Under the pieces are notes generated by a model. It had not been told where the DNA came from. It saw nothing but the letters and a program-made list of their open reading frames with translations, and did no database searches. Both the position numbers and the translations under genes were made by a program. From Iphione sp. A-MEVVRFRX5 (Eukaryota), in contig OZ320318.1 of assembly GCA_976226885.1 (NCBI GenBank), forward strand, positions 67,766,001-67,830,000: 64,000 bases of DNA, written 5' to 3'. Numbering within the stretch: the stretch's first letter is position 1; each line of letters starts with the position of its first letter. Shown here in pieces: positions 3,051 through 55,824 of the stretch.

Positions 3051-6000
3051 TAAGCTTTCCATCGTTCCATTTGATGACTGAGAAAATTCATACATGACAA
3101 CTCATTTCTCTTTATTATCAAAGGAAGCTTTATTCTGGAAAATAAGGTACTGCATTGACTCGAGCGACATGCAGCAAATCTAAGCAGTTCCTGTGGACAG
3201 AAGGCCCTGAAATTTAGATCCGCTAAATGGGTGTACGTCAGTTAGTTGTCACCACTAGAATAATCATATTAATTAGAGGGAAAATTCAAACTCATTGTCT
3301 AGGGCTAGTGGTTTTCAATGGACACTCAAAAGGGAAAAAAACTTATCAAACCAACAATAGAGGCAGAACCTTGCTGCATATCATTTTCCCCTACTTTACA
3401 AAAACATCCACAGAGCATGTCGCCAAAGTGTCATTCACCAACAACTATGATGAGATGAATACATTGCACTAAACCAAATTGTTCCTTTGTTTAGATCCCT
3501 ATCTATTCGGAATAACAAGAACAGTTATGGTATATGATCATAAACTATTGACAATATAATGTGCTACGCATTCCTGGAAATAATTAGTACATGTATGTAC
3601 TCATACTAATGCTCATGCAGTATACCATTATAAGGCATCTAGTGTTCATCTTTAAACAATTGGACAGGGACAGACCCCTGCAACTTGTCTATTGCATACA
3701 TATATATTATGCATCTGAAGACAAAGTAGCATTAACCCCTTTAGCAACTAGATTCTTAATCTCTTTTCCTCTTTTTTAGTTGGACAAGGACAGACACCTT
3801 GGCCATGTGTCCTCAGCATACCTACCGGCAGCAAATCCTTATTAGTAGGTACAGATTGCATCATTGTGTCAACCTCAATTCCACTACTGATGATATATCG
3901 ATCAACACCATTTTCAATCGAGACACTTCAAGCTTATTTTACAGTGTATTCTATGACCACATGTTCCAGACCATACTTTTATAAATAAAGATATTCCTTA
4001 CTGGTCTGCTCACGTCTATTTGATTTAATTAATTCTCTCTCGTAACACTCTCGGAAGACTTACCCTGCCTAATGCATGGCACTTGGTGAAACACAACCTT
4101 ACAGAGAAAATAGCATTGCCTTTTTGGTAGACTTAAGTAGACATACGAAGGAAGTCAGATGTGAGCGTATGCAAGTCCCGACCGCACACCTTTCCACTTT
4201 CTAGCAGTCATAAATGGGGAGCCCCATTTCAATTTATGGCACGCTTATGGCCTTAAATATATATAATGCTTGCATGCCTCATTTAGATATTCTCCTGATT
4301 TTGTATGTCAGACTTTTGAATTGATCCTATTTAATTTTCCCGTCAACCCGTCACCTATCAGAATTCCTAAAAGGTTGAACTCTTTTTTTTTCAATAGTGG
4401 CACTTCCAGTCCTTTAACCTAGGTCAAAAGCATGGCTTTTCCATATCACGCATACTGCATTTCGGCTGTTCATAAACATATCGGTACTATCGAGATCAAT
4501 AGAGTGGTACATAAGATGAACTGCAATTACTGTACAAATGGATAAATTCTACATGTTCTTTTTATTATAAACATCTCTGTCTAACAAAATGACGTCATGT
4601 CCGTATGTCTTAATCCAATCGCATCTTTGATGTGTCTTCTCTCGCTGATATAACCCCGTCGTGCGCATCACGAGGCTAATACACCGGGTAGTCAGAGCCA
4701 CTACATGGAAGAAGAAGCACCTCTTCCTCTTCGACCCACTGACAGGATCGGTAGCCGATGTCCCTGGCGGGGGAGCTGCTCAGGTTTCCCCGGACGAGCA
4801 GCTCATTTTCATGGTGTACAGTTCCTTGTGGTCCGGGGTTCTGTGTGTGACTGGCCGGCAGCCAAGAAACTCCCGGGCCCCCTATGCGTAGTGAGGCAAG
4901 CCTCAGCACTCCGTATCCTGGACACCTGAGGGATAGCTGGTTGTCCTGGTGAAACCCAAACGTTCGTAGTTTAATTCCGTTACATCTTCACTGTCCTACA
5001 AAACAAAAACGGCTTACTCCCTTCAGCATGCTAGTCACTCCAATCAGTAGTAAACTACAGCCAAAAATCTGGTCAAGAGCTGAGACTGTAGTTGCCAACT
5101 ACCGACTCTTGTCAAACCCCCGACCTCTCCACTCACTTGCATGTCTCCACCCCTGCTCTGAACACACAGCATATACGCACATACATACGCACACGAGATC
5201 AGTTTCTTGCCTTGATTCAGATTGTATGGGTCTGGTACCCTGTACCCACCTCGTCCCTTCTTGCGCTCGGATTACCTCTTCTCTAGGGGAGTGACAGATA
5301 TCTTGAAGGTGGGGGTGGGGGAGAAGAGGATGGCTGGCTGCCTCGGGACCTTCTTGTTCCTTCTGTCTGGAAATATGTTTACTTGTCATATTCCTCATAT
5401 CATAGCCGTGTTACTCTCACCTCTGCTTTTGCGAGGCGATCCCCGTTCCTTCATGCTCTTTGTCTCAGTCTCTCCCTCTAACATTTGGCTTAACTTCTCC
5501 CTTCGGTATGCATGTTTTTAGTTAACAGTTCCCCTCTCTTATCCTGTCTTTTCCATACTGTTTTGATATTTCTATCTATAATGAAATTGATTAATTCACA
5601 TGTTCCTTGGTATTGTAGCATATTTATTCCATCTGCATCTGTCTGCTCTCTTTTCAGCCTACTACTTTATGTGTATTTTTGTGTAGTTTCCCACATTTCA
5701 CCATTTGTTTTTAATCCTTTTCCATTCTCTGTAAATCTCTCCTACTCACCTCTCCTTACGCTGATCATGCGGGCATATTTGACACCGTTTTTCGGACGTA
5801 AACCAGATACCATTTTATTTCGCTTCTTTTCTCTTGGTTCCTGTCTTTTTTAAGTCCTAGCCCGCGTAACATGCAACGGTTTCTTGATTAAATGGCCAAC
5901 ACTAGGACACAAACATATTTATATATGTGTCTGATGCATGAGTTTACTCAATTACGTGTAAATGACCTCTGACAAGCAACGTCGTATGAAATAGATGCCC

Positions 6001-7681: not shown

Positions 7682-9177
7682 CGATGGGAGGAACATACAT
7701 GGGGCACCATTGGTGGGAGAGCGAATGATTGGCTAGAATGATGTGTGGGTTGTGGCAAGAGATGGAGATTTTGAGGTGGGCTTGGAGGAGATGGTTGGGA
7801 AGCAGAATGAATGGAAGGGGTGAAGGCTCAGTGGGAGAGGGCAGGCGAGAGCAGTTTTTAAACGCAATCTGGGCATTATTATGTGTGTCGGTTCATGGGA
7901 AATGACCGTCATGGTTGTTGATGGACGTGAAAGTCTTGGTGGGTGGCTGGGAAGAAATAAGACCAAAGACGTCCCAAATGGGTATGTAGCTGAAGTCAAT
8001 ATCAGTACATGTATTTCTTTTTATTGGGGGAAAACTCCGCATACCTAGTCAGCTGGCTCTGTTGGTTGAGTGTGTAAGCTCTGATTTAAGTGAATAGTAT
8101 GACAGACTTAGTATGCTGGGCGTTACTTCCAAAGTCGTGGAAAGAAACTGATATTCTGGTTCAGGTACGGGAAGTGGCGTCTGCTAGCATTCCAGCAGCA
8201 TGAGTCAAAAAACAAAAGGCAAGCTCATTCGATGACAAGTCTATTTTACTTTACACATTCCCTACAAAATGATGTCACTGCTTTCTAACTGAACTGATTC
8301 GTGTGATACACCCCTACCACTGGGTGGTCTGTATCAAGCTTGCGCTTGGTTGACCACCAGCTTTGGCCGGCGGGTACAAGCATTTGTCCTTTGATCGACT
8401 GCACAGAACTAAACAACGTGGCAGCAAGGCGTCAGGTTTATCACATCAAGTGTAAACGGCAACCACGGAGGGGGGTCGAACCATGGACTTAATTTGCACT
8501 CCGTCTTTGATGTCAAATTGTTCGTTTCATTGGCAAGCTTACTCCAAATGTTATCGTTATTTCTTGTGGGATTCACACATCATCGTAACGTTAGTGTTAT
8601 TAAAACGAATCCGAAAATTTCAATCCAGGAACGGGGCTACTGGATCATTAATCACCCAGAAAGATTTCTCGTGAAAAGAAGCATGATAATGACATGCATG
8701 CATCAGTTGATTTTATTGTAGACCCGTTTGTGATGACACAGAGAGAAACATCGCAACCAAGATGAGCAAAAACCTCAGTCTTTCATATATGAGGTAATGA
8801 ACAAAACAATAATATGTGTACAGTTATTGTATACAGGCCCCAAGTCTAGAATGTGTAGACGTCGAAAGCAATGGGTAACATCTTAATTAACTTGTTATTT
8901 GCCTCTTGGTAAATATAATAAAACCATTTTCATGATAAGAAGTAAGCGCGGCCATTTGTGCAAGACAAAAGGACTGGTTGATGAATTTATTGATCACAAA
9001 ATTAATCAAGGTGTCCGCGTAATTAAGTGACCTAGTTGGACAGATCAATATAGCGTTTTTCCATTTTCTCTGCCCTTTAATCTTTTAGTCGGTTTCTGAT
9101 GTGAGCCCATGATAATCTTCATGTTCGTACGTCAGCGTGTCGGTTGTGTGGTTCCGTGACTCTTTGTTCACACTTAC

Positions 9178-30200: not shown

Positions 30201-30857
30201 TATATGTAGTTACATAATTGTAGGAATAGGCCTGTTTTTTTTTTTTTTTACAAAAGTCCGTGTAACACATACATATATAATACATATATAATACAATGTA
30301 ATAAACTGCTGTTGAAGCACCAGAGTACATGTATATGATATGATAATATCATATCGCATAATTGTCGTTGAAGCATTACGAATGAAGAAATAAGGGAAAA
30401 ATAAATATTACTACTGTATATAGAGTAATAACCTCATATTTCACCATACTGTCTTGCAAGAAATTTTATACTTGAGTAGTGTACAGACTATTACTGTGGT
30501 TTTATTCTTTCACTGCACAGCACTAGGTAGACAGGGGATGTGGAAACCAATTGAAAGTACACGGATATTTTTGGGTGGTTTTTAGTCTCCGGTAAGTGGG
30601 CTCTGAGCGACGTAGACAAAACCAATGGTACTTATCCCGGGAAGATACACGAAAAAGGTTGTGGTAACATAAAAAAACTTCCTTGATCGCACCCCGCTGG
30701 CTTTCCCTCCCCCCTGGTCCTGAGTATTTCAACAAACGGAAGTAGAATCCTATATCTCAAGAGCCCCAGCGCGTCGAACTACCTGAAACTTTGTAGCATA
30801 GATTTCAACTTTTCCCATTTTTTTCCTCGAATATGAGAAGTACTTTGAGGTACTTAC

Positions 30858-31515
30858 CTGTCGGGAAAAGCGGTTTGAACGGGACACTGGTAGACTCGTT
30901 GCCATCCACCTCGTTATCATCTGCATTCTGGTTGGGACGCCCTCTAACCACATGGTTTCCACTGGAAGTTGTCCCTCCTGTCGCCGAGGCAGCACCCGCC
31001 GCCGCCGCAGCTCTTTCTTCCTCCTCCCGCTCGCGATCGGCGACAATACGCTCGACGAGCGCGTTGAGCGACTCGACGGTCTTCTGCATCCGGTTAAGCG
31101 AGGTGCGGACATGGTGGATTTCGCGCTGTTGGTGCGTGCTCTGCGCTTTCAGTCGTCGGATGGTGGCCGCCTGATCGCGGTTGGCGCGACGCGCCAGCTC
31201 CAGCTCCTGCGTGTAGTGGTCGACGACGTCTTCCAGGTGTGTGATGGCCACGGTCTGGTTGAGCACACGGAACTTGTGTTCCAGGCGGTGGACCACGCGA
31301 CGTTCGGCTTCGCGCACCCGCCGACCAAGCCGTTCCTCCAGCAGTGTTAGGTTGGCGGCCAGAGCTGCCGCCATCGACGGCGGAAGTTTGGCCTTGCCTG
31401 AGACATCCGTCTCTTGTAGCAGGAGTGTGTCCTGTGCGCGCGTCGGTGCAGTTACCGCTATTACAAGCGTCAATGTTAAGCTAAGAAGTGGGAGCGTTGG
31501 TAGTCTGTGAGCCAT
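30858..31515 (-). CDS. Exon 1 (219 codons + 1 nt) of a secreted coiled-coil protein, probably angiopoietin-like/fibrinogen-related (scabrous-like)
   Basis: aacaaaATGGCT start, hydrophobic signal peptide (LPLLSLTLTLVIAVTAPTRA), long helical heptad region, N-glycosylation sequons (NLT, NQT, NES), low-complexity linker, then PFKPLFPT ending at a perfect CAG|GTAAGT phase-1 donor. The family call rests on this architecture and on the P.(R/T)DC motif that opens fibrinogen C domains. That domain itself is not seen in the window. Confidence 0.85.
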
Positions 31516-31589
31516 TTTGTTTCTCACGTCACGACTGAAGTACGCAAACCTGTCACTTTATCTGGTTCAATGGTGATTCCCACAGGAGC

Positions 31590-49171: not shown

Positions 49172-49209
49172 TTATTTTCTTATCATGACCACTAAACGCT
49201 TTAGTCTGC
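49172..49209 (-). CDS. Candidate terminal coding exon of the two-TM gene ((C)RLKRLVVMIRK*)
   Basis: Acceptor TTAATTGCAG|GC, phase-1 compatible with the exon ending at 49593. Other endings are equally possible. Confidence 0.3.
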
Positions 49210-49592
49210 CTGCAATTAATGTAGGGCAAGAATGATTACATGGTACAATAGCATAACAGTCATATATACTGTGAAGAGAAGGTAATCTTTTATAGAAGGG
49301 AAAATTATGTCTGGCAGAAAGATTCATCAATGCTTGTTACATGTTTATCAAACAAATAGGAGAACCTTTAAGAAGGCTATAAGTATGGACCTTACAGTTT
49401 AAAACCATCATACCCATAAGGGTAGTTTACTTTGATATTGATAATTGTATATTCGAGTGATGAACCTACATGCCGTAAGAAACATATAATCTACAAGGCC
49501 GAATATTACGAGAGGTAAACAAAAGATCGTTCTATAGCAGAGAGACAGGTACTTACCGCGGTATTCTTCTCTCTCTCTCTGCACCTACTCAC

Positions 49593-49647
49593 ATACAGCC
49601 GTGCCGTACTGGCTATTTACGGGGCTTTGGCTATCCTGCCAGTCTCC
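49593..49647 (-). CDS. Exon 3 of the two-TM gene (GDWQDSQSPVNSQYGTAV)
   Basis: Acceptor TACTCTGTCCACAG|GGA in phase 0, matching exon 2. Donor T|GTGAGT at 49592, with alternative donors at 49596 (GTATGT) and 49556 (GTAAGT). Confidence 0.65.
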
Positions 49648-51287
49648 CTGTGGACAGAGTATAGATCGAACATGTTGTGACAAATAGATGAAGTCACCTT
49701 ATCTTTATTCATACTTCCCATTTGACAGCTTCGGTATTATTTTTCAATCAGTAGACCTAATTTACGCAACAAATGGTTAACATGATACTTCCATATTCCC
49801 CTCGCGACCTCTGTACATTTATTGCCATTGTGGTGACAGGCGAAAACAGGCAATTTGAATACATAAGACTTCATCGGTTAAATAAGTGTTGAGATATCTC
49901 AGCTTAGAATTAATATAAAGTAGCCGAAGTATGTCATCAAATGAATATTTCTGGCCTACAATTCCTAGTTCTAATTCGGACTGTTCTACATCTCACTACT
50001 TTGAAACGAAAGCTTTTGTGGAACTATGATACACTCCTTTAAAATAATGTCGAAAATTTATTTGGCTAGGGCTTGGGATATAAAAGATTATGTTCAGAAA
50101 TTGCCTGGTACTGGATTTGATTTTAGAAAGTGATCTGCAGGAGTAATTAACATATTGACAATAATGCTGAATCAAGGGATGTAGGAATAGCAGGACGTGA
50201 TTAAGTGTCATTCGTGGAAGTCCTTGGGGCTTAAGGCTCAGGGAACAAGAACAGCCTACGAATGAGCATCCCAAGGGAGGTTAGTGGAATAGCAGTGGTA
50301 GTATAGTATCGCTACGATTTAAATGCATACTACTCGGACTGGCGTGCAAAAGTTAGGTTACACTTACAGGATAGTGCTCATGAAGTTGCTGACTATCCTG
50401 AAACGAAGAGAGAGCAACAGTGTTCCCAGAAAAACTCAGCTACCGAGAAATCACACTTCATGCCCAAGGTCAAAAGTCCGGTGAGAACCATCCACTTCGG
50501 AGCAAAGGTCAAGCATAGCACACAGTACATGAAGTAATTTTAGAGGCGACCATTTGCGTAGGCAAACAGAAGAAAAGCTGACAGGTATCAAAAAAGATTT
50601 GAACAATCAGTCTCATGCATCTCATAATTTAAGGAAAAACTGGATTTTGAACACAGTGTAACGATTGTGAACTTTCGGTGAGTTCTTGAAGTAGATGGTT
50701 ATCAAGGACATATGTACTTGGAATAGAAGGTGGAAGTTGGAGGGAAAAGTGAGCAAGTTATTTCGAAGTGATGAGAAAAAGGTTGGAAAGAAAAGGTAAT
50801 TGTGTTAAAGTGACATGCACAAGATGATATGTTAAAGACAGATAACGAGATCCACGCTATGCCTTTGAAACAGGTCATAAAAGGTCACCTTGAGCGTAGT
50901 CGTCTGCTTTAGTTTTTGATGGAAGGAAACATAGTATGGCTGTTACAAAATAGGTGACATTGAATTATAACCGTGAAATCTCTTTTAACATATATAACTG
51001 GACTACAAATAATCTTGTGCATAGTGAATTAAAATTAAGTAATCGGTGCACATATTCCGATACTTAGGATACAGGCATACCTCTTAATGCTACAATTGCA
51101 CATTTTCATTGATATACTATATGACTGTTCCTGCTGTAATAACATATATCATTTACCGGATGCATTGGTCGCATATGAGATCGTTACCGATATGACAATA
51201 CTTCATCTGTCAGCCTCAACTTGAGAGGCGATTCTAAGCTTTCAATATGGTATAAGTGAAATATATGAGCTGGTTTGGAAAACTTAC

Positions 51288-51384
51288 CGTGGAGGACAGG
51301 GAAGACCAACTGATGCTGAGGAAGAAAGCCAGAACCGTCAGAATGACTCCGACGGCGAAGACTACGGATCCAACCAGGATATAC
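51288..51384 (-). CDS. Exon 2 of a small two-transmembrane protein (YILVGSVVFAVGVILTVLAFFLSISWSSLSST)
   Basis: Acceptor CTACTTACTCCCTGGCAG|G and donor ACG|GTAAGT. Its 97 bp complete the phase-2 codon (TC+G=Ser) left by exon 1. Encodes a clear TM helix. Confidence 0.85.
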
Positions 51385-51659
51385 CTGCCAGGGAGTAAGT
51401 AGAGTTGGGTGCAGCGGAAATGAGCGATGAACACGGAGATTTATCTCGGCCTCTCAAATACTTATCTGCTACAGGTTCTTACCAGCGATGCACATGTTTT
51501 TCGATATTTTACGTCACTCTACTGAAAGCTCCAATTATTATTTACGAGCTGCGTGCAAGGCTTACCGACCAAATTTTAGGAGGTCAAAAAGCTGGAGCTT
51601 TGTGCTTGCACAGAAATATATTGATACAGCTAAGAGCTGGGCGAGACCTAAAATGGGCC

Positions 51660-51661
<2 letters not shown>

Positions 51662-51702
<41 letters not shown>
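51662..51702. repeat. (AG)n microsatellite
   Basis: About 20 perfect units. Confidence 0.95.
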
Positions 51703-51706
<4 letters not shown>

Positions 51707-52630
51707 GAGGGAGAATGAAACAGATGGAGAGACAATAAGGGAGTTGGTGAATGAACTGGACGAGAGAGACAGGGGGACAACTATTTTGGTGAAGCATTAT
51801 TCGATAATATAAATATTTAGTTTGAATAATTATTTGCCTTCTAAATTAGGTGCTAACGCTATGCAGCAATTACTGGTGCTCTGTAACCAAAAACCATGGT
51901 GAACCATTATCTGCTCTTTTTTTAAAGCATTATGGATGTTTTTAATTCGTGGTGTAGCATTTTGGTTATACCCTGACACCCCCTGTAGAGAGGGACTATG
52001 ACCGGAATCTCATGTATATTGTTTTTTCTTCCATATACAGAAGAGCCTGCACGATTTGGCCTACTTTCTGGATGAGAACGAACAGACACAGATGCTTAGT
52101 TTCCATGCGTCTGGATTTTGTATGCAGTCTAGGAAGGTGCAAAACAATCTCGTCCTCTGTACGCGTGTTTGTGTCAGTGTGTGTATTTATGTATCTAATC
52201 TAATGGGAATTCCAACCAATCTACGCAAACTATGAGGTTTTTGTGCAGATTTCAAGGAATTCAAACCAAATTTTTGTAAACAGTAAGGTTCTTCTGCACT
52301 AAACTGGACGAATTCTGACCAAATCTCTGTAAACAGATTTATTTTCAGATCTAAATGTTCCTCATTCTTTCAACACCAATTTCTCTATCCTACTCATCCG
52401 AGTTGGTCCACAGTCCGGAGAAACATTAACATTGCTCAGCTTTTAACTTTCTCGTACACACGTACACAGAGTCTGGGGAAAAACCAGTACACATGGAAAC
52501 TGGGTCTATGAAATTTACAGGAACAAATAACTGAAGACATACTTGATCAGGTGCTGTGGTACGTAAAGAGGTACATAATGTAGCCTTTAATAGTAGTGAC
52601 AAATTGTAAGGAATTGCCAGGTTCACTTAC

Positions 52631-52806
52631 GAGTAGTCCTTGTTGTCTGGGTTTGCCCTCAATCTCTGGTGGCCTACGCCGAGTATGATGCCGCCGAGAA
52701 TGCCCAGAACGAGGCCCATAGAACCACAGCAGATGAACATGGGCCGGGGCCGTTTACCACGCCGAACAACAGGGCCTGAGAAGGCCCCATCCCGGGTCGC
52801 ATACAT
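52631..52806 (-). CDS. First recognisable coding exon of the two-TM protein (MYATRDGAFSGPVVRRGKRPRPMFICCGSMGLVLGILGGIILGVGHQRLRANPDNKDY+S)
   Basis: Basic cytosolic stretch, CC, then a TM helix. Ends TAC TC|GTAAGTG in phase 2, matching the next exon. The true start could be further upstream or at Met23. Confidence 0.8.
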
Positions 52807-53386
52807 CACGGAAAAGAACCCAGGGCGTTTGCGGCAAGCGACAAAAGTTAAGGAGGAAGGGGATACCGGTTGGGAAGGAAGGGGGAGGCAAGGGTCTCAG
52901 TATTTGGACAGAGCATGTGTGGTCGCCAACCACCTGAAGTTTGGTTGAATGTGGCGATATCCGCTTGGCCAGGCCATAGCGCCAGGTGCCTTGATGAGTC
53001 CTTGATACTCGTCAATGTGCACTGGTAGTTAGTTTATCCGTGTGTTTCCTTGTAATGGCGAAGTTTTTACGTGTGCATGTATACAGGATCGTTGTGCTCT
53101 TATGTTATATGTGGCTGGGTGTTAATGTGCTTGAGGTGTCCTAGGGGATAACGTTTACACTTGACCGTCAAAAAGGGGTACACCCTCTTCTATTGTATAC
53201 GCCTAGGTGTAGCTATATAGTGCCGACATTTACTGTACAGTGGTATCCTTTACGTAGTCTATAGAGGCGCTGCCTGCACCTCAAGCCTAAGACGGCGAAT
53301 AGGTCCTGCCGACTACATACTGCTCAGTTTGTACCTCCAAGCATCAAGAGCAGCTCATTTAGGTAGAATGTAAATCACATGGCTGG

Positions 53387-53566
53387 TGACGTCATCAAGG
53401 GGCGGGCTGGCTCATGCATGGCACAGTCATTTTGGCTGCTTGGAGGCGATGGGCGGCCGCGTCCTCACAGGTTGGTACGTCCATGGGGCAGGCTGGCCTG
53501 CATGTTACCACCGTCACCATCAGCATCACCTCCTGAGTTGGGTCCCATGGCGGCTATCATGGCAAC
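53387..53566. promoter_or_regulatory. CRE, GC box and RFX-like motif upstream of the two-TM gene
   Basis: TGACGTCA (53387-53394), GGGGCGGGC (53399-53407) and GCTATCATGGCAAC (53553-53566), 0.6-0.75 kb 5' of the ATG. Confidence 0.4.
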
Positions 53567-55824
53567 ATCGACCACTAAAGCACTTCCCTTGCAACAGGCT
53601 CTGAAGGAGATAAGAAAACAGGATATGGGATTAGGAGCCTTCCTCATTTTGAAAAGGCTTTATTAATTTGTTGAGGAAAAAAGAAGGTTCATTAAGGAGT
53701 AATTTTCCGGCCAATTTGCACTTCAGTCGCCGAGCCAAGTCGACACCGTGTCCAGTTAACTGTAACTGACCCATTGGCAAGAGGCTTCGGTTTCTTCACC
53801 TGTCTTTGACTGCTGGTGCCACTAAACCCTTATATAAGTTCTACTTACAGAAAATAGTCCATTCTTCAGCAAGAATCTTTAGTAAAGAAATGTTTCCGTG
53901 GTGCCAGCAGTGAAAGTTGGACAAGGTCCAAGCCTACTAAGGACAGGGCAGTTGGAGACGATACTTCATTAGTTAAATTCAAATACTTTTTATTTCGATC
54001 AAATCTTTATAACACTTCCTCTCCAACCAGTTTAAAAATGTTTGAATTCCCACTGTCATAGAATATTAGGATTTAAGTGTTAACCCTATTGGGGCTGAGG
54101 AAGTTCTCACGAAATGTACCCAGAGGGAAAGTCCGAATAGAAATATATACTACCGGAAGTTGAAAGGGCTCATAGACAATACTGTTAAAATTCATGTTTA
54201 TTATAAATGAAACTACATGTATATAAAACCCTCTATAACAATGAAGAAAATACAATACAATGTATTAATTTTCAACCTCTTTTTATGCCAAATGAATATT
54301 CAAAGCACCTCCAAAATATATCTGGGGTCCATCAGAGGCGTTTGGCTTTGGAATGCCCAATGGCATCATACGGTCTGGTAGGATTAATCATTGGGGACAG
54401 GTTTCCAGCAAACCGGGGATGTCGCCATCCTGCCAATGGGAACCACTTTTAGAGTGAGTCAAATGATCGTTGTAGACCGTGCATAAAAATCATGGAGTAA
54501 AAAGTAGGTATGGATAAGTCATCTAAAAGCGCAAATAGATTTACACAAATAGAATTGCACATATTGAAATGTGTGCTACAAAAGACTAACATTGTAGGAA
54601 TCATTATTTGTCATTGGGCCTAAAACATCTTTCCGACAACATGCTGAACAAATATAGGGTCGGAAGGTAGGCGTCGTTTTTAACTTTAAATTACACTGAT
54701 ATCGTATGAATGTTAAGGACAAGAGGAAGAAATTGTGTATAATATATATCTCTAGCTGCATTCACTCACAAGATATTGGTAAAACGATTGAAAAAAAAAG
54801 TTCCAGAAGGAGCAAAATCGGGGTAGGCCGGGCCAACCCAAAGACAAATTTTGTCTAAGCTCGTATAACAAAGACATCGTCAAATGTCAAATAAACTAAG
54901 GTGTAATACAACATGGAAGTGCTTTTTCAAGATACACCTTACTTAGCAACATTCAGACGTCCTGACCGCCCTTGTGTGATGTAGTCATGGTCATCTTGGG
55001 CTGGGACAGAATGGGACTCGAATACCTCATTTATATGATCAGGCGACAGTATCTAGTTACGAACGCTCTATGGGGACCTGGTCGTAGCGACAGAGAGGGG
55101 ACATGTTACTCGTGCTCACCCCCGTAACAGATTAGACTGCCTTGCTCTTATCTGCCTTCTCCAGGGTCCTCTACGGGAGCAGGCCCCATTGCCTATCATG
55201 TCCCGAACCTCCGGTACCACGAAAATATGCCCGCACGCATCAACAGAGAGAACAGGTATCCACATACATGTCCAAATAGTCATGTCCATTTACAGTTAAA
55301 CACAACTTTGACCAACTCGTGGCCTCTGGCTATCGGGCTGACTTGGGCCTTCCTTATTTCCCCACTACGTACAGACAGAATGTTGTGGGGATTTCTTGGC
55401 CAAAACAAACCAGGGACTAATCGGTGAAACAGAGCGGGCGTCGGGTTGAGATAAGTTGGTGCGCTTTGGACAGGACACAGTGGTGTGTATTAGCCTCGCC
55501 AGCGCGGGAGTGGAGAGGAACTCTACAGCTATTGACCTGACCATATCTGGTTGGCATGCCTGTTTGCCTCTAGTTGGCTAAAGGTCCATCCCCTCCGGCT
55601 TCCCTGCATTGTCTCCCCGCAGCAAGGCCTGCCATGGCTCATGGGGTTTAAACCAGGTACTCAAACCTCGAAACGCTTTGTTCAGTGCTGACCTTTCCTT
55701 CGACCAATGTGCCCTATAGGGAGTACATTTGTTCCACGTGGCCTGCTGGTAGGCACAGATAAAACTCCTTTACACACAAGAGAGTTCAAGGCGGGGAGAC
55801 AAAGATGAATGTAAAACCACTCAC

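What the first reader, a model, noticed from the sequence alone, without database searches (positions are those of the whole stretch)
49172..52806. Hidden spliced gene for a small two-TM hairpin protein that the ORF track misses
Seen: three short exons with canonical splice sites and exactly matching phases (2, then 0) join into MYATRDGAFSGPVVRRGKRPRPMFICCGSMGLVLGILGGIILGVGHQRLRANPDNKDYSYILVGSVVFAVGVILTVLAFFLSISWSSLSSTGDWQDSQSPVNSQYGTAV. The layout is basic N-terminus, di-Cys (possible palmitoylation), TM1, short loop, TM2, Ser/Gln-rich tail. Established: this topology is typical of small ion-channel modulators and auxiliary subunits (PIRT, TMEM100, barttin-like). Inference: a lineage-specific or divergent member of that class. 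I cannot assign an ortholog.
Basis: partly seen in the sequence, partly recalled or inferred. Interest (0 to 1): 0.7.

Follow-up and report, generated by a model that had tools for sequence, protein, structure and literature searches.

The report
Unannotated small two-helix membrane protein gene
The three short exons are a real, single-copy gene for a roughly 111-residue membrane protein with two helices, from an unnamed family also found in DNA from marine samples; what it does is untested, and its last exon is unconfirmed.

Summary

Exons 1 and 2 are certainly coding:
- Exon 1 has seven relatives in environmental and Logan contigs (E 8e-11 for the single sequence). All share the Met-Tyr start, an invariant CCGS motif and a GT donor at the same phase-2 position.
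- One 22-kb contig carries a 97-nt exon 2 of identical length and phase (62% identity).
- A polyadenylated transcript from another organism reads straight across the exon 1/2 junction.
- Identity by codon position is 0.60/0.74/0.32.

Exon 3 rests only on splice sites and composition. No RNA run was listed.

The protein is a hairpin: basic N-terminus, di-Cys, a glycine-zipper helix, a short loop, a second helix and a variable tail. It has no Pfam family and no named relative, and it is single copy in this genome.

The PIRT/TMEM100 reading is only a resemblance. A language-model search of the homologue puts PIRT, TMEM100 and TMEM174 nearest, but their Pfam models do not match and the polybasic C-terminal helix is absent. 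The scan had not noted this gene before.

The parts
52631..52806 (-). Exon 1 (coding, 176 nt, ends in phase 2): Met-Tyr start, basic N-terminus, di-Cys, first membrane helix, basic loop ending Asp-Tyr
   Evidence: Sequence and translation. phmmer hits at E 7.8e-11 to 6.7e-06 in 1.84 billion representatives. Profile hits P0010 and P0011, which were not in the profile, at 7.5e-23 and 4.6e-22. GC3 is 0.67 against 0.45 for open frames in the window. Identity by codon position is 0.60/0.74/0.32.
52744..52764 (-). Conserved polybasic/proline juxtamembrane motif (RRGKRPR; the family consensus has RRGK-x-PRP)
   Evidence: Alignment of eight sequences.
52726..52731 (-). Invariant Cys-Cys pair at the cytosolic end of helix 1; candidate S-palmitoylation site (inference)
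   Evidence: Invariant columns C55, C56, G57, S58 in alignments A2 and A3.
52672..52737 (-). Membrane helix 1 (residues 24-45) with a glycine zipper at G31, G35, G39 and G43
   Evidence: Hydropathy maximum 2.33 over residues 24-42. The glycines are read directly. G31, G39, G43 and G45 are conserved in the family.
51385..52630 (-). Intron 1 (1246 nt, GTAAGT...CAG, 40% G+C), containing a (CT)n microsatellite at about 51660-51700
   Evidence: All seven genomic homologues have a GT donor at the same phase-2 position after (D/E/N)(Y/H) plus 2 nt.
51288..51384 (-). Exon 2 (coding, 97 nt, phase 2 to phase 0): membrane helix 2 (51383-51312) and the start of the Ser-rich tail
   Evidence: Translation. 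L005 8495-8591 is a 97-nt exon with the same phases, an AG acceptor and a GTAAGT donor, 62.5% identical at E 1.3e-11. Identity by codon position is 0.69/0.91/0.34. The transcript L004 reads across the junction.
49648..51287 (-). Intron 2 (1640 nt, GTAAGT...CAG, 38% G+C)
49585..49647 (-). Exon 3, coding part (20 codons plus TAG): acidic Ser/Gln-rich tail. The 3' end of the exon is not determined; a strong GTAAGT donor lies at 49551 in the 3' UTR
   Evidence: Translation. It is the only candidate of 13 with G+C 0.57 and GC3 0.60. It has no homology support.
50368..50397 (-). Possible 30-nt in-frame cassette exon (TTTCAG acceptor, GTAAGT donor, phase 0 to 0); speculative
   Evidence: GC3 is only 0.3 by direct count from the sequence, unlike exons 1-3.
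49172..49209 (-). Possible alternative last exon, reached from a GTGAGT donor after 49593. It would give a polybasic 12-residue ending. Speculative and disfavoured by codon usage
Evidence: GC3 is about 0.42 with many A-ending codons (direct count).

Best explanation
This is an intact, single-copy, protein-coding gene on the minus strand. It has at least three coding exons and encodes a protein of about 111 residues from an unnamed, conserved family seen so far only in this genome and in marine environmental or Logan contigs.

Shown:
- Exons 1 and 2 are under protein-level selection.
- The position and phase of intron 1 are conserved.
- A homologous mRNA is spliced there and polyadenylated.
- The protein has two strongly hydrophobic helices joined by a loop of 12-24 residues.

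Inferred:
- It is a hairpin with both ends in the cytosol. There are six basic residues before helix 1.
- The invariant Cys-Cys at the cytosolic end of helix 1 is lipid-modified (palmitoylated).
- The polybasic RRGK-x-PRP stretch lies on the acidic inner leaflet.
- The glycine-zipper face of helix 1 (G31/G35/G39/G43) packs against helix 2 or against the membrane helices of a partner protein.

Most likely role (inference, about 35-40%): a small, non-catalytic accessory or regulatory subunit of another membrane protein. That is the way PIRT and TMEM100 work, but membership of their families is not demonstrated. The C-terminal tail is variable and probably disordered.
For: - Anatomy.
- Composition: the exons have 53-59% G+C and GC3 of 0.60-0.69, against introns at 38-40% and a null GC3 of 0.45.
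- Relatives of exon 1: P0001, P0002, P0004, P0006 and P0007 at E 7.8e-11 to 6.7e-06 against 1.84 billion proteins. P0010 and P0011 come from the profile search.
- Conserved Met-Tyr start and invariant P, CCGS and G columns.
- GT donor in phase 2 at the homologous site in all seven genomic copies.
- Exon 2 orthologue of identical length and phase in L005.
- L004 is a polyadenylated transcript whose reading frame runs ...DDYT-FILTGS... across the junction.
- Identity by codon position is 0.60/0.74/0.32 for exon 1 and 0.69/0.91/0.34 for exon 2.
- Single copy, with no paralogue.
- Two helices in the hydropathy profile and in the AlphaFold2 model of the homologue.
- Nearest language-model neighbours are small two-helix eukaryotic membrane proteins: PIRT, TMEM100, TMEM174 and Neurensin clusters.
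Against: - There is no expression evidence for this species: no RNA run was listed.
- Exon 3 has no homology support, and the tails of the window, L005 and P0006 are not significantly alike (shuffle p = 0.2).
- No AATAAA or ATTAAA lies within 2 kb downstream of the stop, so the 3' end is unresolved.
- The loop is also net basic (3-5 Lys/Arg in most members), which weakens the topology inference.
- Nothing tests the proposed function: there is no Pfam family, no PDB relative and no informative structural neighbour.
- The organisms behind the homologous contigs are unknown.
Confidence: 0.75

Rival explanations
1. It is a true, very divergent invertebrate member of the PIRT/TMEM100 group of vertebrate two-helix TRP-channel modulators. 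It would act by binding a TRP-type channel and inner-leaflet phosphoinositides.
For: - The language-model feature search of the full-length homologue puts PIRT (0.92 and 0.91; 200-204 of 256 features shared), TMEM100 (0.89) and a mixed PIRT/TMEM100 cluster (0.89) among its nearest clusters. The tool states that counts of 170 or more are typical of same-family hits.
- Size and architecture agree: disordered N-terminus, two helices, short loop, both ends inside (PMC6773951, PMC10045937).
- A conserved polybasic patch lies next to the membrane.
Against: - The PIRT and TMEM100 Pfam models do not match any exon or homologue at E <= 10 and do not hit the locus in the genome.
- The same tool warns that when five or fewer of the ten best family-bearing hits agree, the family is probably wrong; here it was five.
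- The shape search shows no PIRT or TMEM100 row.
- The polybasic patch is N-terminal here, not the C-terminal amphipathic helix that binds PIP2 and TRPM8 in PIRT (PMC6773951).
- The three-exon tail has no basic residue.
- The loop intron is, from my memory only, not shared with the vertebrate genes.
Confidence: 0.17
2. It is a self-associating glycine-zipper hairpin that forms small oligomeric pores or membrane-remodelling assemblies, rather than an accessory subunit.
For: - Helix 1 has a perfect G-xxx-G-xxx-G-xxx-G register, and the small residues are conserved in the family.
- Helix 2 carries conserved Gly and Ser at heptad spacing.
- MAFFT aligned the first 12 residues of the two genomic exon-2 peptides onto helix 1 of the homologues, which may reflect similar motifs or may simply be a misalignment of short fragments.
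Against: Small-xxx-small motifs are equally typical of simple hairpin packing and of heteromeric contacts. There is no experimental or comparative evidence for oligomers. The AlphaFold2 model is of modest confidence (mean pLDDT 65).
Confidence: 0.08
3. The gene is real, but the third exon or C-terminus differs from the reader's model. Possibilities are a different last exon, a 30-nt cassette exon at 50397-50368, or the polybasic ending at 49209-49172.
For: - Exon 3 has no conserved counterpart.
- There are alternative strong splice signals: a TTTCAG...GTAAGT microexon, a GTGAGT donor after 49593, and a GTAAGT donor at 49551.
- The best exon-3 candidate in L005, and the tail of P0006, both carry basic patches that the window's three-exon tail lacks.
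Against: Exon 3 at 49647 is the only candidate whose G+C (0.57) and GC3 (0.60) match exons 1-2. The microexon (GC3 0.3) and the 49209-49172 exon (GC3 about 0.42, many A-ending codons) do not match them. All three frames of 49647-49552 reach a stop, so translation ends in this exon unless an internal donor is used.
Confidence: 0.3
4. It is a chance alignment of open frames and splice-like sites, or a dead remnant, and not a functional gene.
For: Short exons with GT/AG are common in 64 kb. No RNA evidence was obtainable. No annotated protein matches it.
Against: - Cross-species conservation at E down to 7.8e-11 in a library of 1.84 billion proteins.
- A conserved start, donor position and exon-2 length.
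- Third-position-only divergence.
- A spliced polyadenylated homologous mRNA.
- Intact frames and a codon bias.
Confidence: 0.02

Closest known systems
PIRT (phosphoinositide-interacting regulator of TRP; Pfam PF15099)
   Same: - A small protein (about 111-154 residues here, 137 in human PIRT).
- A disordered N-terminus, two membrane helices with a short outer loop, and both ends predicted inside.
- A polybasic stretch next to the inner leaflet.
- PIRT clusters are among the nearest in the language-model search (PMC6773951).
   Different: - There is no match to the Pfam model.
- The basic patch sits before helix 1, not in a C-terminal amphipathic helix.
- PIRT is not described as having the invariant CCGS motif or the glycine zipper.
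- The tail is acidic in the window.
- PIRT is known from vertebrates (the Atlas rows are mostly Chordata).
- An intron splits the loop here.
TMEM100 (Pfam PF16311)
   Same: - A two-helix hairpin of about 134 residues with intracellular ends and a loop of about 9 residues (PMC10045937).
- A feature score of 0.89.
- From memory only (unreliable): helix 2 of both has a G-x-V-V-...-G pattern.
   Different: - There is no match to the Pfam model.
- The loop sequences are unrelated.
- The window's model has no basic C-terminal motif.
- TMEM100 is described as unlike any other family and is known from vertebrates (PMC10045937).
CD225/dispanin proteins (IFITM, PRRT2)
   Same: Small two-helix proteins with palmitoylated cysteines at the start of the first hydrophobic segment (from established knowledge, not tested here).
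   Different: There is no Pfam CD225 match at E <= 10. The conserved motifs differ, and dispanins do not appear in the language-model neighbour list.

Membership tests
PIRT (PF15099) | Sequence matches the family profile at or above its curated cut-off (30.6 bits) | tested here: not met
   hmmscan of the three exon peptides and of five homologues at E <= 10 gave no PIRT row. A six-frame search of the whole genome with PF15099 found nothing at this locus; the best hit elsewhere was 18.6 bits at E 1.05.
PIRT (PF15099) | Two transmembrane helices with intracellular N- and C-termini (PMC6773951) | tested here: inconclusive
   Two hydrophobic helices are present. The orientation is inferred only from charge: 6 basic residues before helix 1, a net +1 loop and an acidic tail. 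No topology predictor or experiment was available.
PIRT (PF15099) | Polybasic amphipathic C-terminal helix that binds PIP2 and the TRPM8 S1-S4 domain (PMC6773951) | tested here: not met
   The tail of the three-exon model has 0 Lys/Arg and 3 Asp/Glu. A polybasic ending exists only in a speculative fourth exon with atypical codon usage.
PIRT (PF15099) | Modulates TRP channels | not testable with these tools
   This needs co-expression electrophysiology.
TMEM100 (PF16311) | Sequence matches the family profile at or above its curated cut-off (34 bits) | tested here: not met
   There was no TMEM100 row. The genome search with PF16311 did not hit this locus; the best hit elsewhere was 22.9 bits.
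TMEM100 (PF16311) | About 134 residues, two helices, a short conserved extracellular loop (YSFNSHGSI in human; PMC10045937) | tested here: inconclusive
   Size and helix count agree. The loop here is basic, ends in Asp-Tyr and shows no likeness to that fragment.
Unnamed family defined here (window, P0001, P0002, P0004, P0006, P0007, P0010, P0011) | N-terminal Met-Tyr/Phe start, the RRGK-x-PRP-x-F-x-CCGS-x-G motif, and a Gly-rich helix 1 ending G-x-G | tested here: met
   Alignments A2 and A3 and the MAFFT alignment. The window scores 90.9 bits at E 5e-23 against the profile, but the window's own exon 1 is a row of that profile.
Unnamed family defined here | Phase-2 intron directly after the (D/E)Y of the loop, followed by a 97-nt exon encoding helix 2, (F/Y)IL-x-GS... 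| tested here: met
   The donor position is shared by seven of seven genomic copies. A 97-nt exon 2 is present in the window and in L005. The mRNA L004 is continuous across the junction.

The most novel reading that the evidence does not exclude
This family is the invertebrate counterpart, or an ancient sister, of the vertebrate PIRT/TMEM100 class of two-helix TRP-channel and phosphoinositide modulators. In it, the lipid-binding polybasic element lies on the N-terminal side of the hairpin, next to a palmitoylated Cys-Cys. That would move the origin of this class of sensory-channel accessory subunits well before vertebrates and provide a tractable invertebrate model.
Probability: 0.15. Interest if true: 0.6.

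Novelty: new variant of a known kind. Interest (0 to 1): 0.4.

Why it matters
Small multi-exon membrane proteins are routinely missed by gene finders. This one has no named or annotated relative in a search of 1.84 billion representative proteins. It is nevertheless conserved at the protein level across several marine organisms, with a fixed intron position.

It adds a new family to the poorly charted set of two-helix accessory proteins. Its sharply conserved cytosolic motif (polybasic stretch, prolines, Cys-Cys, Gly-Ser) is directly testable for lipidation and lipid binding.

If the resemblance to PIRT/TMEM100 proved to be homology, it would bear on how TRP-channel accessory subunits arose. 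If not, it is a routine addition to the catalogue of orphan membrane microproteins.

Tried and rejected
- **Pfam on the exon peptides and homologues.** Nothing significant. There were only sub-threshold FAM176 (E 0.062) and DUF5316 (E 0.14) rows, which I reject as noise.
- **Atlas search with exon 1 alone.** No usable hit.
- **Word-index protein searches.** None for exon 1. Only the query itself for the P0006 core. Only exon-1-sized environmental ORFs for the profile.
- **JGI metagenome scan with the profile.** 13 pattern matches, none confirmed.
- **PDB sequence search of P0006.** No hit.
- **Shape search of the AlphaFold2 model in the Atlas.** All rows had TM below 0.5 by query and unrelated families. 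This is uninformative for a helical hairpin.
- **Spurious phmmer hits.** P0003, P0005, P0008 and P0009 are repeat or unrelated proteins that match only the Gly-rich helix.
- **Exon 2 in L006.** The weak hit at 4821-4853 is not an exon.
- **Exon 3 homology.** No counterpart in L005, L006 or L004. The (D/E)Y...LAS likeness between the L005 exon-3 candidate and the P0006 tail is not significant (p = 0.2).
- **MAFFT with exon-2 fragments as separate rows.** It aligned their first 12 residues onto helix 1, so that alignment was not used for searching.
- **Taxon of the homologous contigs.** Their other ORFs have no Pfam family. Only ERR14888979 could be traced, to the EMO BON marine water and sediment metagenomes (PMC12856487).
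- **Profile-profile comparison with PIRT and TMEM100.** Not run. No tool gave me their sequences, and I did not type them from memory.
- **The joined spliced peptide.** All searches used single exons by reference or natural homologues.
Full report
**What is in the sequence**

- Exon 1: an ATG at 52806 opens a frame of 58 full codons plus two bases. It ends at 52631 and is followed by GTAAGT.
- Exon 2: after a pyrimidine-rich tract and CAG (51387-51385), a 97-nt exon runs 51384-51288 and is again followed by GTAAGT.
- Exon 3: after another CAG (49650-49648), an exon starts at 49647.

It is the stop codon of a possible fourth exon (49209-49172). That exon would be reached from a GTGAGT donor after 49593 and would add a polybasic 12-residue ending.

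**Is it more than chance?**

For exons 1 and 2, yes.

Within the window:
- The three exons are G+C islands (53-59%) in 38-40% introns.
- Their third-codon-position G+C is 0.67, 0.69 and 0.60. The mean is 0.45 (sd 0.10) for the 501 open frames of at least 50 codons in the window. Only 2.2%, 1.6% and 7.8% of those frames reach these values.

Across organisms:
- The family scans and the word search left the protein open, so I used the single large phmmer search on exon 1.
- Among 1.84 billion representatives it found five true relatives: P0001 (E 7.8e-11), P0002, P0004, P0007 and P0006. Four further hits were repeat-protein noise.
- A profile of these then found P0010 and P0011 at 7.5e-23 and 4.6e-22.
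- Six of the seven are short ORFs on genomic contigs from ENA or Logan assemblies. These include a TARA metagenome, a "GARB21" metagenome and an EMO BON marine sample (PMC12856487).
- These six stop where exon 1 stops, or read a few codons into an intron.

Conserved gene structure:
- All seven genomic copies (the window plus L005-L010) have a GT donor at the same place. It lies two bases after the (D/E/N)(Y/H) that closes the loop, in phase 2. The donors are GTAAGT four times, and GTTAGT, GTATGT and GTCAGT once each.
- On the 22-kb contig L005, 4 kb downstream of exon 1, lies a 97-nt exon (8495-8591). It is bounded by TTTCAG and GTAAGT and has exactly the length and phases of the window's exon 2. 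It is 62.5% identical in protein, including the ending SWSSLSS.
- The seventh relative, P0006, comes from L004, a 1218-nt contig that ends in poly(A) after an AATAAA, so it is an mRNA.
- The reading frame of L004 runs without interruption from the exon-1 part (...DDYT) into the exon-2 part (FILTGS...). This is the product predicted by splicing at the conserved site.
- The first in-frame ATG of L004 is at 451, so that protein is probably 154 residues, not the 196 that were called.

Selection:
- Codon-by-codon comparison of the eight exon-1 sequences gives nucleotide identities of 0.60, 0.74 and 0.32 at positions 1, 2 and 3.
- For exon 2, window against L005, the values are 0.69, 0.91 and 0.34.
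- Third positions are randomised while first and second positions are held. This is the signature of long-term selection on the protein in this frame and on this strand.

Copy number: the gene is single copy in its 1.18-Gb genome and has no detectable paralogue.

**What remains open in the gene model**

- No RNA run could be listed for this stretch, so there are no junction reads for this species.
- Exon 3 has no detectable counterpart in L005, L006 or the mRNA L004.
- The best exon-3 candidate in L005 (8935, a 30-codon tail with a basic patch) and the tail of P0006 are not significantly alike (p = 0.2 by shuffling). So the tail is variable in this family.
- All three frames of 49647-49552 meet a stop.
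- Two alternatives are visible but fit the codon bias poorly. One is a 30-nt in-frame microexon (50397-50368) with strong sites (GC3 0.3). The other is the polybasic 49209-49172 ending (GC3 about 0.42).
- No AATAAA or ATTAAA occurs until 47560, and a strong GTAAGT sits at 49551. The 3' UTR may therefore be long or spliced.

**The protein**

- Exon 1 encodes a basic N-terminus (6 Lys/Arg, 1 acidic) with the family motif RRGK-x-PRP, followed by F-x-CCGS-x-G and a hydrophobic helix (residues 24-45, hydropathy 2.33).
- The glycines of that helix fall at 31, 35, 39 and 43, which is a glycine zipper.
- The loop of 12-24 residues is basic at its start and ends in Asp-Tyr.
- Exon 2 encodes the second helix (hydropathy 2.76), starting (F/Y)IL-x-GS.
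- Invariant in all members are one Pro, Cys-Cys-Gly-Ser and four Gly.
- AlphaFold2 on the natural full-length homologue gives helices 52-76 and 83-119 and a C-terminal helix 124-152. Confidence is moderate: mean pLDDT 65, and 70-88 in the membrane part.

**How it most likely works (inference)**

- It is a hairpin with both ends in the cytosol.
- It is held against the inner leaflet by the polybasic stretch and by acylation of the Cys-Cys pair.
- It offers a small-residue helix face for tight packing with helix 2 or with a partner's membrane helices.
- I commit to an accessory or regulatory subunit of another membrane protein as the most likely role (about 35-40%).
- A self-associating glycine-zipper assembly is a minor alternative.
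- Nothing here tests function.

**Comparison with known families**

- There is no Pfam family, no PDB relative and no named protein.
The language-model feature search with P0006:43-196 returns an unnamed chordate cluster, then PIRT clusters (0.92 and 0.91; 200-204 of 256 features), TMEM100 (0.89), TMEM174 (0.82) and a Neurensin-bearing cluster (0.82).
- All of these are small eukaryotic two-helix proteins, so the search may be recognising the class rather than descent. The tool's own consistency check was at its warning level: five of the ten best family-bearing hits agreed.
- The direct membership tests fail. The PIRT and TMEM100 profiles do not match the exons, the homologues or this locus in the genome.
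- The shape search is uninformative.
- The polybasic amphipathic C-terminal helix by which PIRT binds PIP2 and TRPM8 (PMC6773951) is missing from the window's tail. The conserved basic element lies on the other side of the hairpin.
- I therefore describe it as working like that class, not as a member.
- A profile-profile comparison would be the proper test. I could not run it because no tool supplied PIRT or TMEM100 sequences, and I did not type them from memory.

**Verdict**

- This is a real, previously unnamed family of small two-helix membrane proteins, a new variant of a known kind.
- Interest is moderate. It rises only if homology to the vertebrate TRP modulators, or a partner, is shown.

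- Earlier notes of this scan call the genome an annelid. I did not test that, and the scan had not noted this gene before.
- Only single exons by reference and natural homologues were used.

Noticed in passing
window 30805-31527 (-): A 240-residue open frame with a signal-peptide-like start and a long charged, coiled-coil-like stretch. It lies beside the most G+C-rich part of the window (32-34 kb, 55.5%). It is probably the first exon of a secreted protein. It has no Pfam family above threshold and no PDB relative.
   Followed up: partly
window 50368-50397 (-): A 30-nt in-frame segment inside intron 2 with a very good acceptor (pyrimidine tract 0.84, TTTCAG) and a GTAAGT donor. It may be a cassette microexon of this gene, or a chance pair of sites.
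   Followed up: partly
window 51660-51700: A (CT)n/(GA)n microsatellite of about 40 nt in intron 1. Similar CT/GA runs occur around 27.2 kb, and just after the stop codon at 49570-49584.
   Followed up: no
window 53371-53580: A 60-67% G+C block 0.6 kb upstream of the start codon. It may be a promoter or a 5' UTR exon. The open frames on both strands there show no family.
   Followed up: no
L004 1-450: The homologous mRNA has a leader of 450 nt before the first in-frame ATG of the conserved protein. The gene caller had extended the ORF upstream from a non-ATG start (196 instead of about 154 residues).
   Followed up: partly
L005 8935-9024 (+): The best exon-3 candidate of the orthologue lies 343 nt after its exon 2. 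It encodes a 30-residue tail with a polybasic patch followed by an acidic Ser/Thr-rich end. This is unlike the window's tail, so the C-terminal tail of this family evolves fast.
   Followed up: partly
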